DNA of 64,000 bases from Podarcis pityusensis (GCA_964106645.2 OZ067049.1); one strand, 5' to 3'; counted from the first letter of the stretch, positions 35,001 through 41,000 are shown. The notes: generated by a model not told the origin, from the sequence alone. Program-made: numbers and translations.

Positions 35001-38000
35001 TTTTTTCAGGCTCAACCATCTACTTTTGAAGCATAGTCCAACAATATCTGGAGGTTGTGTGAAGCTGCTTTGGAGTATGTTTTTAGAACATATCAATAAA
35101 TATCAGGCTGATATATGATCTATTACCACTCATATGCTTATCAAATTTTCTGTCTGCTTTTCTTATTAGAACTGAATTGGACTTATAAGAAGTGGCATAT
35201 ATAAGGCATATGTTTTAAAATGTAGCAAGAAGATTCTAGCAAGTACTTTTTCTGTGTGCCTAATTAGAATTATATCAAAAGCAAATGATGTGAAAGCACA
35301 GTATCTCTCATCATGGACTAAAAATAGCATGTTTGAAGGTTTCAGAGTTCTAGTTTTTTAAAAAACACAGTAGTTCATTCTTCTATAGAACAAAGACAGT
35401 AACATTACTCTAAACCAAATCATTTTATTGGTGTACTTGAAGTTGGACAGCAAGATGATGAGCCACTTTCTGTGAGGTTTTGGAAAATTAATATAAAGTG
35501 GTTGCATGGAATTATGTGTGTGTGTTGCGGGTCAGGAGCATGGAGAAGCAGTCATTTATATTTGTGAACTAGCTCTATTTCTGACATAGGATAGCACTGG
35601 ACTACATTTGCATGAAATTGGTGACATTTGTTATATGGTGTAACTTATGCACATGTCCTTAAACTTGTCATTCATTTGATGTAATATGTCTTCAAAAGAG
35701 AGCATGAACCATCAGTAATTAAAATCAGTTAGACTAATACTGGCCAAAACACCTTTTATCCAACAGAACCATGATTTTTACCATGGTAGTTTGCTTTTAT
35801 ATTTAAGCTGTATCACATGTGTTCTCATTCATATGACTAATAATAATTTAATATTGTTAATCCATAATTAGCATTGTGTAATGGACGGGGTGGTTAATCT
35901 CTGAAAGACCTGGTTAAGTGTATAACCAAAATAAAATAGTAATTTTGATATTAAATATAAACTGAATTATGTACTTTTTAAAATTTTCACTAAGTGTGAG
36001 AGAAGAAATATTTAATCACTGTCAAATATATTTATATAGTTCAATATCAATATCATGTGATTTAGTATGGTGTGCATTCAAGCAAGATGCAACCTATTTT
36101 ATAATTTTGAGAATTAATTGTGCACAATTCAAATTTTTATGTGGCGCCCAAACACTGAAAGTAAAACTCATTTTGTCAAATTCTGCACTGTAACTCCATA
36201 TAACACTATCTGTTTTGTCAGCAAGCCAAACACATCTTCACTCTTCTTTCAAACCTAGTATTCTTCCTGACATTTAGTGAGGAGTCTTCCTCTAATATTC
36301 TCTACTATTGCAAGGACAGCAGACTTTGACCTCACTTTTTATGACTATTTGCAGTCCTAAATTATATAAAGTCAGTGTCATCTTGTCTTGGGTCACTTGC
36401 TGCTGTGTTGACGGCATTAACACAGGCTTCATCTTTGCAGTTTGCTGTCTCATCAAACCGAAGAGTACATTTGATGAATTTCAGTATTTTTGCCTAAAAG
36501 TTATCCACTTAAAAAAATACATTAGCATTTTTTGTTTTTATACTTTCTCACGCAAATCTTTTTACGTACAAATTTTGTTAAATATTTTCGGTATAGCTTG
36601 GAAATTCAATTTTATACCTTAAGATTTTCATACGTTCACGAAAATCTTAGTGATCCTGCTTATGATAGTTTGTCAATTGATGCTCATTTATAAAATGGAG
36701 CTGCTATGCATTGTGATGCAGGCAAGTGACTGAACTGAATGACTCCTGCTTTCCCCCCAATATACTGGATAGAGTTATGCATCTGTTGTGCATAGCAAAT
36801 GGCAAACATTTAGAACCTTGTTGCAAAGCAGTTGCATGTTCAACTAATAATGAAACAGATCCTTGAGATCAATCATCAGTTGTGTTCCAATTTACTTTCA
36901 AGTAATTTGTGTTACTTCTTCAGCCCAGTTCTTTTGTCAGTTTCCTTTCTGTGCATCTTACAACCATATTTCTTTTGCGTGCTTAATTTTTTCTTTATCC
37001 TTTCTAACCAAACTTGCCTTTTCATCTTAGAAAAATATATAAGAAAGTGGAACCACAATTATTATTATTTGTAGTGTGGCATGCTCCTGTTCAGTACACA
37101 CATGTACACAGCCTTTTTTCCTCCACCCCCAGTCAGCCAAGATTTTGTTTCAGTCACATTGTAGTAATTTTGTATTGTATATTGTTTTAAAATCTACTGT
37201 TTATTTTATTTTAATCGTGTCAAGTTGCTTTGAGATTTTCAATAGAAAGTGACTGAATAATCATTAACATAATATTGCTCATTGAGCATGCGCCATCTTC
37301 ATTGTGCTGTTTTGGAGTTTCTTGGCTATTTCCTCCCATAATGCCCCCCCCCCCCGAAATCTCCATTTTGTGCTGTTTTAGCTGTATAAGGGCTTGATAT
37401 CTAAGAACTGAGATGGCTAACAATATTTATAATTCATGCCAAATATAAGTAGGCAACGTTATGGAACTGAAATGTTAGATACTTTGGTTCACGTCAAAGT
37501 AGCAGGTACCCGCATCGGTGACTAATAATAATGCAACTTCATGGATTGCGCTCCATGCAGGAAGCTTTCCTCTTGATGTAGCCTCCAAAGGGCTCCAAGC
37601 ATGCCAATGGAAATCTTGTCTCTCCTTGTGAATGCAAGGGGCTTTCATGGTAATGATCTGGCCAAGTTTTGTGTTAACAGATCTCACACACTGCTCACTT
37701 CATAAATGCAACACCCTTAATAGTTCAGGTGGGAAAATTTATCCTCATAGAAAAAATAAATTCTGAAGGAGGCTTTTCTTCCCCAGTAAGTATTTGTCCT
37801 CTTCTTCATTTCTTTCTCAGCTAAGCAACTAAGCTCTTCCTGGGTTCAAAGAAGGCGGGCTATGACAAATTTAACAGGGGCCTATAATTTAATTCTTTCT
37901 TAACAGCGCAATCCAAAGTGTTTGGATTTGGCAGATCTTGGGCTTTCTTGGCTGAGAAGATAATGGTATTGCTCTATATGAACTATTCTTAATCCTTTGC

Positions 38001-41000
38001 CTCTTAAGAATGCATTCAAGTAGGTGTCCTGTCCTTTGTGATTGTGACTTCCTTGTATTGTAAAGGGACAAGAATCTGAACAACTACATGCATGTACCCT
38101 TTAAAACTGATATGCATGTGTGTTGTGCTCCGATATCTGTACCATAGTATGAAATTTCATCAGAAGCTACCTGTGTAAGGTAATGATGCTTGATCAAGGA
38201 GCAATAAAAGTGGTACTAGCAGAAGTTGTGTCTTTGGTGGGAGGGGAGACTTTGATGGGCAAGCAGGCAGAGAAATGAGCCCAAATAAAGTTTGTTCTAG
38301 TTCATTGTAAGTTGGCTCTGGGATGTGTCTAATAAACTAGGGCAGGGGTGGGGAGCCTGTCGCCCCCATATGTTACTGAACTACAGCTCCCATCCTTCAT
38401 GGCCATTAGCCATACTGGCTAGGGCTGATGGGAATCAGAGTCCAGCAACATCTGGAGAACCCTACTTCTGGGCTCAGACAGAGCTTTCCAAACTGTGTGC
38501 CACAACACAACACCTACAGCTGCAATGTGTAGGTGTGTCACACAAACACTCCCTGTGCTCTTATAAGGAGTTAGTTTAACCTCTGGTTTGCTAGTAAAGC
38601 TGAATTACTGTGTCACAAAATGATGCATGTCTAAAAAGTGTGTCACCAGTATGAAAAGTTTGGAAAGCTCTGGGCTAGAGGAAGTCTCTGGATGAAAGCA
38701 ACAACCTGTAGACAACTTAACTTCAACTTAAGAGTGTAACCATTTCAAAATTACAATTGAAAACCCAGTGACTCTTACTTATGATGCTAAGCAGAACATG
38801 ACTAGTTAATGTATTGTTTTTTCATCCCAGAGCTGGTTCAAACCTTTCTGTATCTTAAACAGTGTTAGGGGAACATAGCCTTTGCATACACACCAAAAAA
38901 ACTTTACACATTTTGAAAGTGAGGTTCTGTCATTTCCCACTCCCATAAAAGAAATTGGGGTACAGGCTTTTGCAGCAAAACGTTGAACGTGCAGTGCATC
39001 ATACTTCTCCAAAATATGCTCTTAACCTGTTCTTTATATTACACAGCTCTGTTTTTCCCATTTTATTATGTGCTGAATATAATGTAAATCATGTCTGCTT
39101 GTCTTTTGGCTGTTCTAAGCTGAGGAAACAGTTGAGTGTGGTAGGTGTTTTACCCCCCCCCCCTTTATTCTTCCATTATGTCTTCAGTCCATGTAATCAC
39201 TTTGCATCCTATTTTTCCCCCTTTTGCGCTTCTCAGAGGAAATTGAAGGTACATGTACAAGCTTCCCTGCTGGGCTGCAAGTGATGGCTTAAAAACTAAG
39301 TATTCTAGGTCATCACTGACTTAGAGGCAATTAGAAAATAATCCATATAGATAGCAGTATATGTAGTCATAACAGCCAGTTGCTTAGTTGTTGCTGGAAT
39401 TGTTGTTTCAATCCTGAGAATCGTGGTAGTAGAAGACTGTGAACATGTTGCTTTCTGCACGTAGTTCCTACAGCACAGTACTGGCATGTGTGCATGAAGA
39501 TTCCTGTGGGGTAAGGCACAGGGATCCACATGTGTTATCCCATTGTCAGATGTGGTTTCTTCCTTTGTATTTTTCCTTCTCCTCACATAGCAGGAATTTT
39601 GGGGGCCCAACGCAACAGATCTGCCTGTTTCTGCACATGGGTCAAGTATGCAGAACAGGAGTGAATGTGTGCTAAAACCTCTGAATGTTAGCAAAGTAAC
39701 ATAACTGAACAAAGCAGATATGTTAACACAAGGCATTTCCATGGAGCTAAAGATGATGTCAGTCCTATTGCATGGCTCTAATAGATTATCTTTCTTAAAT
39801 TCAAACTTTGACACTGAATAAAGTGGATCTTTTCCAGTCATTAGGGGTGCAATTTTGGAACACAGCTTGACAGATGCTTTACTGCTGTGGTGTCAATCTT
39901 TGGGGGACTTTTCACTTGCAGCATACATTTAAACAGTTGTACCTCATTGATTTCTTTAGATAGGTTATCTATCTATCTATCTATCCATCTGTCTGTATAT
40001 ACCCAAAAGCTGTAAAGTGTTTTGTTAGACATTTGGTATATTAAAATAGGCACCAATACTATTTTATACCTAAGAAGTTATATTCATTAAAAATACCCTT
40101 TCTGTCTGATCCATTGAGCCAAATACAAAAACTCCTGATATTCTTTGTAGATTTCTTTACCTTTGTGTTTCAGCTGTTGTATTTTTTATCCTACATTAAA
40201 ATATAAAGTAGAACACCTTTTAAAATCACTTTTTTATTTTCTGTCATGAATAAGGCAATAAAACAGTGAAAAGTTAAATATGCATGTTGCTGTACTCCAA
40301 AATCTCTTGCTCAACTTCAGAACAACACAGTGATTTATTTTTAAGCAGTGGCATATTGAAGGCTTTTTATGCTGTGCTTTCTGCAGTTGTCATTTTTAAG
40401 TAACTCTTCTTTTGCATTCATGGCTGGGCATCTAACTATTCTGCTTTATTTCTTGGCTTTTGTTCTGTACGCTTTTACACTTCATCCAGAGGAAGCTGAA
40501 TGTGCTGGTCACAACAGTGGAGCCCACATAGGTGAGCAGTTGCTTACAAAAGACTCTCTTTCTTTCTCAGCTTTTTCCTGGATGGCTACAGAGTTTGCAG
40601 GTAATGGGCATCACTGCATGCTATGAATCTGCTAGATTAAAAAATGGCTCACTGGATTTGACACAAAGGATCTGCATCCTAACCGCAACATATGTTACTA
40701 ACATTGAAATATAGAATGCATTGAAATGCTACCTTGAATATAAGGAAATAATTTACTTGGGTAGAATTTGCAAGGAAATTTAAATACTTGTCCTAGACAA
40801 AATGTTAGGCTGGCTATATTCCATCTGACTACATTATTTTTCTATCACAGTGTTCTTCAATCTTGGGTCCCAGATGATATTGAACTACAACTCCCATCAA
40901 GCCTTATTAAATAAGCTGGTAGGAATGGTGAAAGTTGTAATCTCATGACTTAGTGTAGGGATAGCCATTGTAGTACCTGACACTTGTTGTGGGCTACAGT

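What the first reader, a model, noticed from the sequence alone, without database searches (positions are those of the whole stretch)
36701..40531. Hidden microexon array (21 + 12 + 42 nt) rebuilding an MPP3-like HOOK insert in lizard MPP7
Seen in the sequence: three phase 1-1 exons at 36701-36721, 39237-39248 and 40490-40531 in the large HOOK intron. Included together they add 25 aa and read ...[39 protein letters not shown] (601 aa). Recalled, not searched: MPP3 has ...YDQPCDK-ETCDCEGYLKGHYV-AGLRRSFRL at the same place, matching in segment length (7 and 14 aa) and in C, D and G positions. MPP4 has acidic segments there too, while canonical 576-aa MPP7 lacks the insert. Inference: an ancestral, tissue-regulated (neural or retinal) HOOK module kept in this reptile. 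It would place an acidic, Cys/His-bearing patch beside the basic HOOK motif and could alter SH3-HOOK binding to PALS1/Crumbs-complex partners.
Basis: partly seen in the sequence, partly recalled or inferred. Interest (0 to 1): 0.85.

Follow-up and report, generated by a model that had tools for sequence, protein, structure and literature searches.

The report
Known MPP7 HOOK microexons, one misplaced

Summary
All three segments exist as written. Only two are real exons.

- **42-nt exon (40490-40531).** It is part of the annotated 597-aa MPP7 isoform X1 of Podarcis muralis and P. raffonei. It lies in a ~700-nt intronic island conserved across squamates.
- **12-nt exon (39237-39248).** It encodes EEIE. 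The same exon is annotated in turtles, birds, mammals, frogs and a gecko. Its AG and GT sites are kept in lacertids, agamids and a viper. It is deleted in Anolis. I found no lacertid model that includes it.
It matches none of about 120 MPP7 isoforms and has a weak acceptor and a GC donor. It ranks 170th of 1158 open candidates and aligns only to a near relative.
- **True 21-nt exon (39120-39140).** It encodes S-EETVEC and its splice sites are invariant in six squamates.

The MPP3 comparison holds. Budgerigar MPP3 has 21- and 42-nt phase 1-1 exons at the same position.

The array is not hidden and not special to reptiles. A 21-nt neural-up Mpp7 microexon is already listed for mouse.

Another note of this scan (s1-732225) covers the same stretch.

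Novelty is low.

The parts
34632..34696 (+). Constitutive MPP7 exon before the array. It encodes [21 protein letters not shown] and ends with a T that starts a split codon (phase 1).
   Evidence: Identical to Podarcis MPP7 isoform X1 (P0103).
36701..36721 (+). Rejected as a chance open segment.
   Evidence: Weak acceptor and GC donor, rank 170 of 1158. No database isoform contains it. It aligns only to P. raffonei, with 2 of 21 bases changed. It lies outside all conserved islands.
39120..39140 (+). True 21-nt microexon, phase 1-1, encoding S-EETVEC (acceptor ...ttctaag, donor gtaggt).
   Evidence: Found and read. The peptide matches Podarcis X1 (P0103, P0189) exactly. The exon and both splice sites are invariant in six squamates.
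39237..39248 (+). 12-nt microexon, phase 1-1, encoding E-EIE, with a strong polypyrimidine tract and a GT donor.
   Evidence: rank 3 of 1158. Kept with AG and GT sites in lacertids, two agamids and a viper, and deleted in Anolis. The same EEIE or EEIK exon is in annotated isoforms of turtles, birds, mammals, frogs and a gecko.
40490..40531 (+). 42-nt microexon, phase 1-1, encoding [14 protein letters not shown].
   Evidence: rank 1 of 1158. The peptide matches Podarcis X1 exactly. The exon and about 200 nt downstream are 79-89% identical to the four more distant squamates.
47399..47569 (+). Constitutive exon after the array. It starts with CT (TCT = Ser when all microexons are skipped, GCT = Ala after a microexon) and then encodes the basic HOOK motif [14 protein letters not shown].
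39007..39395 (+). Conserved intronic island that holds the 21-nt and 12-nt exons.
   Evidence: Local blastn against Anolis, Pogona, Crotalus and Phrynocephalus gives 67-73% identity over 190-350 nt. Alignment A1.
40005..40430 (+). Conserved intronic island upstream of the 42-nt exon. It has an invariant TGCATG at 40281-40286 and an almost invariant 26-nt block at 40098-40123. Places 40431-40481 were left out.
   Evidence: 70-78% identity over 330-440 nt.
40532..40727 (+). Conserved intronic flank downstream of the 42-nt exon, with an invariant TGCATG at 40615-40620 (about 85 nt after the donor).
39484..39496 (+). Pair of GCAUG motifs in a small conserved island about 240 nt downstream of the 12-nt exon.
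   Evidence: The pair is only partly conserved in Anolis and Pogona.

Best explanation
The window carries the whole MPP7 gene of a lacertid lizard close to Podarcis. Its large HOOK intron holds the ancient vertebrate array of three frame-preserving cassette microexons: 21 nt at 39120-39140, 12 nt at 39237-39248 and 42 nt at 40490-40531.

Alternative inclusion turns ...[13 protein letters not shown] (576-aa type) into ...NRKS-SEETVEC-(EEIE)[23 protein letters not shown] (597- or 601-aa types). That places a strongly acidic stretch, probably disordered, directly before the basic HOOK motif.

Every junction splits a codon. The upstream exon ends in T, while the 12- and 42-nt exons begin with AG. 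In this lizard they therefore give TAG unless the 21-nt exon, which ends in G, comes first. Inclusion is thus ordered.

Inferred, not shown: conserved UGCAUG motifs in the deeply conserved flanks suggest control by RBFOX-type factors in neural or muscle tissue. The acidic insert probably modulates, by charge, what the neighbouring basic motif and the SH3-GK unit bind.

For: - **Gene identity.** All MPP7 coding exons map to 8002-58736.
- **True 21-nt exon.** Found by its peptide. Exon and splice sites are invariant in six squamates.
- **Match to annotation.** The peptides of the 21- and 42-nt exons are identical to Podarcis muralis and P. raffonei isoform X1, 597 aa.
- **12-nt exon.** The same exon is annotated in many vertebrates, including mouse X5/X6 and a gecko. 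It is kept with its splice sites in four of five squamate lineages examined.
- **Conservation.** The main conserved islands of the intron, and the only ones shared by all four distant squamates, surround these exons. The rest are short matches in single species.
- **Splice-site rank.** 1st, 3rd and 16th of 1158 candidates.
- **MPP3.** It has the same 21 + 42 nt phase 1-1 exons.
- **Regulatory motifs.** Invariant TGCATG at 40281 and 40615. The motif occurs 13 times in the intron against 2.9 expected from composition.
- **Mouse.** A 21-nt neural-up Mpp7 microexon is listed in a supplementary table of PMC8395343.
- **Isoform combinations.** 21-only (583 aa Anolis sagrei, Crotalus X4), 21 + 12 (587 aa marsupials) and 21 + 42 forms all exist as models.
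Against:
- No lacertid model includes the 12-nt exon, so its use here is inferred from conservation only.
- Database isoforms are mostly predicted (XP) models whose RNA support I could not inspect.
- I did not verify that the mouse microexon lies in the HOOK intron. Only its length matches.
- The AlphaFold model was poor overall (mean pLDDT 49), so 'disordered insert' is weakly supported.
- UGCAUG motifs lie both upstream and downstream of the 42-nt exon, so the direction of any RBFOX effect is open.
Confidence: 0.88

Rival explanations
1. One reading: 36701-36721 is a real 21-nt exon, perhaps specific to this lineage, spliced before the 12- and 42-nt exons to give ...SAMHCDA-EEIE-EEAEC...
For: It has an AG acceptor and a GC donor in a good donor context (CAG|GCAAGT). 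It is open in phase 1-1 and ends in G, so it would also avoid the TAG. P. raffonei keeps the sites and the frame.
Against: - The acceptor has almost no pyrimidine tract (score -7.2) and the segment ranks 170 of 1158.
- No MPP7 isoform of about 120 has such a peptide.
- It has no detectable homology in Anolis, Pogona, Crotalus or Phrynocephalus.
- Two of its 21 bases differ in P. raffonei, against about 5% divergence in the flanks.
- The conserved exon at 39120-39140 already fills this role and is the one annotated in Podarcis.
Confidence: 0.03
2. The 12-nt segment is no longer spliced in lacertids. It persists only as part of a conserved intronic regulatory island, and the lizard makes only 576-, 583- and 597-aa forms.
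For: No Podarcis, Anolis, Pogona or Crotalus model contains it. Anolis has lost it through an 18-nt deletion without losing the gene, so it is dispensable in at least one squamate.
Against: - AG, GT, the length of 12, the open frame and 11 of 12 bases are kept in agamids and a viper, while the flanks are about 70% identical.
- The acceptor is the best in the intron.
- A gecko model contains EEIE.
- Annotation pipelines often miss 12-nt exons (general knowledge).
Confidence: 0.3
3. The 12- and 42-nt exons act mainly as poison exons. When included without the 21-nt exon they create TAG and send the mRNA to nonsense-mediated decay, which tunes MPP7 levels rather than making a protein variant.
For: T + AG gives TAG at both exons in this lizard (note s1-732225). 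Squamates lack the tandem acceptor that lets other vertebrates use a 39-nt form alone (the SY-AEC... isoforms; sequence).
Against: The peptides of both exons are conserved from sharks to mammals and in MPP3, which points to selection on the protein. Models that include them always carry the 21-nt exon or the 39-nt form, and none is truncated.
Confidence: 0.07

Closest known systems
MPP7 isoform X1 of Podarcis muralis and P. raffonei (XP_028607220.1, XP_053266571.1; 597 aa)
   Same: The HOOK sequence ...[34 protein letters not shown] is identical to the translations of window exons 39120-39140 and 40490-40531.
   Different: These models lack the 12-nt EEIE exon. The window comes from another lacertid: about 95% intron identity to P. 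raffonei and a few amino-acid differences elsewhere.
601- and 600-aa MPP7 isoforms of turtles, birds, mammals, frogs, lungfish and sharks
   Same: They share the 21 + 12 + 42 (or 39) nt array at the same place, for example YEETVEC-EEIE-EDAECAGYNSGTYI in turtles and YEETVEC-EEIK-EDAEY... in mammals.
   Different: Squamates read S instead of Y at the first split codon (T|CT against T|AT). They read EEAEC instead of EDAEC. They also lack the tandem acceptor that yields the 39-nt form used alone in 589-aa isoforms.
MPP3 (MAGUK p55 subfamily member 3), HOOK exons
   Same: The budgerigar MPP3 gene has 21-nt and 42-nt phase 1-1 exons between an exon ending in T and an exon starting with CT GGC (AGLRRSFRL). 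The peptides YDQSSDK and EDCDCEGYFNGQYI align with MPP7 at Y, ED, C, G, G, Y[IL].
   Different: No 12-nt exon was looked for or seen in MPP3. The insert is part of the main 585/586-aa MPP3 form. The middle residues differ.
Alternative HOOK-region inserts of other MAGUKs (DLG1/SAP97 I2, I3 and related inserts)
   Same: Short alternative exons between SH3 and GK that change what the HOOK region binds. This is from general knowledge of the family and was not tested here.
   Different: The sequences are not homologous. The DLG1 I3 insert is itself the basic 4.1-binding motif, whereas the MPP7 insert is acidic and sits beside a constitutive basic motif.
Neural and muscle microexon programmes (SRRM4, RBFOX, PTBP1)
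   Same: Exons of 51 nt or less that preserve the frame, with strongly conserved flanking introns and conserved UGCAUG (PMC4317164 for the class). A 21-nt Mpp7 exon is listed as neural-up in mouse (PMC8395343).
   Different: Tissue pattern and regulator dependence are untested for this lizard. Whether the mouse exon lies in the HOOK intron was not verified.

Membership tests
MPP7 (MAGUK p55 subfamily member 7) gene | L27-L27-PDZ-SH3-HOOK-GK protein that is orthologous to annotated MPP7 | tested here: met
   tblastn of Podarcis MPP7 X1 maps all coding exons to 8002-58736 at 88-100% identity. Pfam domains of the homologues are listed. The best phmmer hits of the 171-nt exon are MPP7.
Conserved alternative cassette microexon (21-nt exon, 39120-39140) | Splice sites, preserved frame, orthologous exon in annotated transcripts, and both inclusion and skipping forms | tested here: met
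   AG and GT sites are invariant in six squamates. It is included in X1 models and skipped in 576-aa forms.
Conserved alternative cassette microexon (42-nt exon, 40490-40531) | Splice sites, preserved frame, orthologous exon in annotated transcripts, and conserved flanking introns | tested here: met
   It is skipped in the 583-aa Anolis sagrei X2 and in Crotalus X4.
Conserved alternative cassette microexon (12-nt exon, 39237-39248) | Splice sites and frame kept across lineages, and an orthologous exon in annotated transcripts | tested here: met
   Kept in lacertids, agamids and a viper, and lost in Anolis. Annotated in a gecko, turtles, birds, mammals and frogs. Not annotated in lacertids.
Any of the three microexons in this species | Junction reads in RNA of this species | not testable with these tools
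MPP3-type HOOK module (shared ancestry of the insert) | Same exon lengths and phases at the same position, and alignable peptides | tested here: met
   Budgerigar MPP3 locus L006 has 21-nt and 42-nt phase 1-1 exons with the same split-codon layout.
RBFOX- or SRRM4-regulated neural microexon | Conserved UGCAUG in the flanking introns | tested here: met
   TGCATG at 40281 and 40615 is invariant in six squamates. The motif is enriched 13 against 2.9 expected in the intron.
RBFOX- or SRRM4-regulated neural microexon | Tissue-specific inclusion that depends on the factor | not tested
   The only support is a mouse table entry for a 21-nt Mpp7 exon.

The most novel reading that the evidence does not exclude
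Lacertids do splice the unannotated 12-nt exon, which would give a 601-aa MPP7 absent from current lizard annotation. In squamates the array would then work as a strictly ordered gate. The tandem acceptor that lets other vertebrates use the third exon alone has been lost, so the 12- and 42-nt exons depend on the 21-nt exon to avoid a TAG. Anolis has in addition deleted the 12-nt exon.
Probability: 0.5. Interest if true: 0.25.

Novelty: already known. Interest (0 to 1): 0.15.

Why it matters
The practical value is a correction for annotation. The true exons are 39120-39140, 39237-39248 and 40490-40531, not 36701-36721. The 12-nt exon is probably missing from lacertid, agamid and viper gene models.

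Biologically, MPP7 and MPP3 share a 21 + 42 nt split-codon microexon pair that therefore probably predates their duplication. It sits in one of the most conserved intronic islands of the gene. I found no paper in the library on its function.

An acidic switch beside the basic HOOK motif of a polarity scaffold is a reasonable, though not surprising, target for experiment.

Tried and rejected
- **RNA reads.**
  - The look-up of sequencing runs was given a 10-kb stretch that was mostly intron. Exon-only RNA holders then fell under its 5% word threshold, and it returned only runs guessed to be RNA. That was my planning error.
No junction evidence could be obtained.
  - Alignments and local blastn stop at 40430 and restart at 40482.
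- **Joined model.** Only the 171-nt exon was long enough to search by reference. All full-length comparisons used database proteins.
- **Structure.** The AlphaFold2 model of Podarcis X1 from a 36-row alignment was poor (mean pLDDT 49). The HOOK region scored about 25 and showed no secondary structure. That is too weak to say how the insert packs, so no fold search was run.
- **Solved structures.** The nearest is the MPP5/PALS1 SH3-GK unit (4wsi, 7m4r). Nothing is solved for the MPP7 HOOK.
- **Fetching genes.** The turtle gene was too long to fetch, at 239 kb. Non-longest isoforms were not on record.
- **Extra exon.** The candidate 30-nt exon at 40571-40600 was rejected. A 1-nt indel in other squamates breaks its frame, and Anolis lacks both splice sites.
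Full report
**1. The observation**

- The three segments are in the window as described.
  - 36701-36721: AG acceptor, GC donor.
  - 39237-39248 and 40490-40531: AG acceptor, GT donor.
  - All are phase 1-1 and open in the claimed frame.
- The flanking exons are also as stated. Exon 34632-34696 ends ...NRKS plus a T. Exon 47399-47569 starts with CT and then encodes GFRRSFRL.
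- The intron between them is 12.7 kb and holds 1158 AG...GT/GC segments of 6-90 nt that are open in phase 1-1.
- By a rough splice-site matrix written from general knowledge, the 42-nt segment ranks 1st and the 12-nt segment 3rd.

**2. What the database proteins show**

- I searched the 171-nt exon by reference against the representative library.
  - A frog MPP7 of 595 aa reads NRKS-YEETVEY-EDAEFDAHNTGTYL-AGFRRSF.
  - A mouse model (isoform X6) reads NEETVEC-EEIK-DTGHDGNNSGTYI-AGFRRSF.
- Two searches seeded with database proteins returned about 120 MPP7 isoforms. I extracted their HOOK regions.
- Four forms are annotated from sharks, gar, lungfish and frogs to turtles, crocodiles, birds and mammals.
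  - 601-aa form: 21 + 12 + 42 nt.
  - 600-aa form: 21 + 12 + 39 nt.
  - 597-aa form: 21 + 42 nt.
  - 589-aa form: 39 nt alone.
- The first exon always encodes xEE[TA]VE[CY]. None encodes anything like SAMHCDA.
- Podarcis muralis and P. raffonei isoform X1 (597 aa) read [32 protein letters not shown].

**3. The true first exon**

- A search of the intron translation for EETVE found it at 39120-39140.
- Its acceptor is ...ttctaag, its donor is gtaggt, it is 21 nt long and phase 1-1, and it encodes S-EETVEC.
- It lies 96 nt upstream of the 12-nt exon.
- With it, the window's exon translations match Podarcis X1 exactly in the HOOK region.
- tblastn of that protein places the whole MPP7 coding region at 8002-58736 of the window.

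**4. Comparison with other squamate genes**

- I fetched the MPP7 genes of P. raffonei, Anolis carolinensis, Pogona vitticeps, Crotalus tigris and Phrynocephalus forsythii.
- The 21-nt exon and both its splice sites are invariant in all six sequences.
- The 12-nt exon keeps its AG, GT, length and open frame in the lacertids, both agamids and the viper. It reads EEIE, EETE or EKIE, with 11 of 12 bases identical against about 70% in the flanks.
- Anolis has an 18-nt deletion that removes the acceptor and most of the 12-nt exon. Its donor is also mutated.
- The 42-nt exon and about 200 nt after it are 79-89% identical to the four distant squamates. The 425 nt before it are 70-78% identical.
- Within the whole intron, the conserved islands shared by all four distant squamates are 39007-39395 and 40005-40727, and a small island at 39482-39559 is shared by two. 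The rest are short matches in single species, or look like repeats.
It aligns only to P. raffonei at 95%, and 2 of its 21 bases differ there.

**5. The MPP3 comparison**

- Parrot MPP3 reads KKPV-YDQSSDK-EDCDCEGYFNGQYI-AGLRRSFRL.
- In the budgerigar MPP3 gene these are separate exons of 21 and 42 nt, both phase 1-1.
- They sit between an exon ending in T and an exon starting with CT, which is the same split-codon layout as in MPP7.
- The pair therefore probably predates the MPP3/MPP7 duplication.

**6. How it most likely works**

- Shown:
  - Inclusion adds 7, 4 and 14 residues that are rich in Glu, Asp and Cys. They sit directly before the basic motif [12 protein letters not shown].
  - Because the upstream exon ends in T and the 12- and 42-nt exons start with AG, using either without the 21-nt exon gives TAG. 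The scan's note s1-732225 also saw this, and I confirmed it.
  - Other vertebrates have 589-aa models (SY-AEC...), which imply a 39-nt form of the third exon that can be used alone. The squamate exon begins AGGAAG and no squamate has such a model. That the 39-nt form comes from a tandem acceptor, and that squamates have lost it, is my inference.
  - Models with the 21-nt exon alone exist in Anolis sagrei and Crotalus.
- Inferred:
  - TGCATG is invariant at 40281 and 40615, a GCATG pair sits near 39490, and the motif occurs 13 times against 2.9 expected in the intron. This suggests RBFOX-type control.
  - A mouse table lists a 21-nt Mpp7 microexon as neural-up (PMC8395343). I could not check its position in the gene.
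  - The insert is probably disordered. It may mask or tune the neighbouring basic motif by charge. The only structural support is a poor AlphaFold model.

**7. What could not be done**

- No RNA evidence from this species was obtained.
I worked beside them and sent none of their letters to a search tool afterwards.
Exons were handled singly by reference, and full-length comparisons used database proteins.

**8. Verdict**

- The array is real and ancient, but it is already annotated, including in the same genus, so it is not hidden.
- The only unannotated piece is the 12-nt exon in lacertids, agamids and vipers. It is conserved, but its use there is unproven.
- Novelty is low and interest is 0.15.

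Noticed in passing
L002:31470-31500 (Anolis carolinensis MPP7 intron): Anolis has an 18-nt deletion that removes the acceptor and most of the 12-nt microexon, and the donor GT is changed to AT. This is a lineage-specific loss of an exon kept in other squamates.
   Followed up: partly
window 40571-40600: A 30-nt AG...GT segment, open in phase 1-1, lies 40 nt after the 42-nt exon in the conserved flank. A 1-nt indel in other squamates breaks the frame, and Anolis lacks both sites. Some mammal models (Marmota, Fukomys, Pseudorca) carry an extra 6-aa piece (DAVCAT-like) after the third exon. It might derive from this conserved region.
   Followed up: partly
window 40098-40123: A 26-nt block (begins CTTTCTGTCTGATCC) is almost invariant in six squamates, about 370 nt upstream of the 42-nt exon. 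Its function is unknown.
   Followed up: no
window 34697-47398: TGCATG occurs 13 times in the intron against 2.9 expected from base composition. Three copies lie in conserved islands.
   Followed up: partly
window 39120-39121 and 40490-40495: Squamates read Ser (T|CT) where other vertebrates read Tyr (T|AT) at the first split codon. Their third exon starts AGGAAG rather than a tandem-acceptor form, which fits the absence of 589-aa-type isoforms in squamate annotation.
   Followed up: partly
window 8002-58736: The whole MPP7 coding region spans only about 51 kb here and 53-70 kb in other squamates. In the tortoise Gopherus evgoodei it spans about 239 kb.
   Followed up: no
P0206 (Crotalus tigris MPP7 isoform X4): This model has a 14-residue insertion (EGYFNLLRWSGMKK) at the start of the guanylate-kinase domain, just before the GPVGVG loop. 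It is probably a retained or mispredicted piece.
   Followed up: no
They were left out of all later searches and alignments, and nothing is claimed about them.
   Followed up: no
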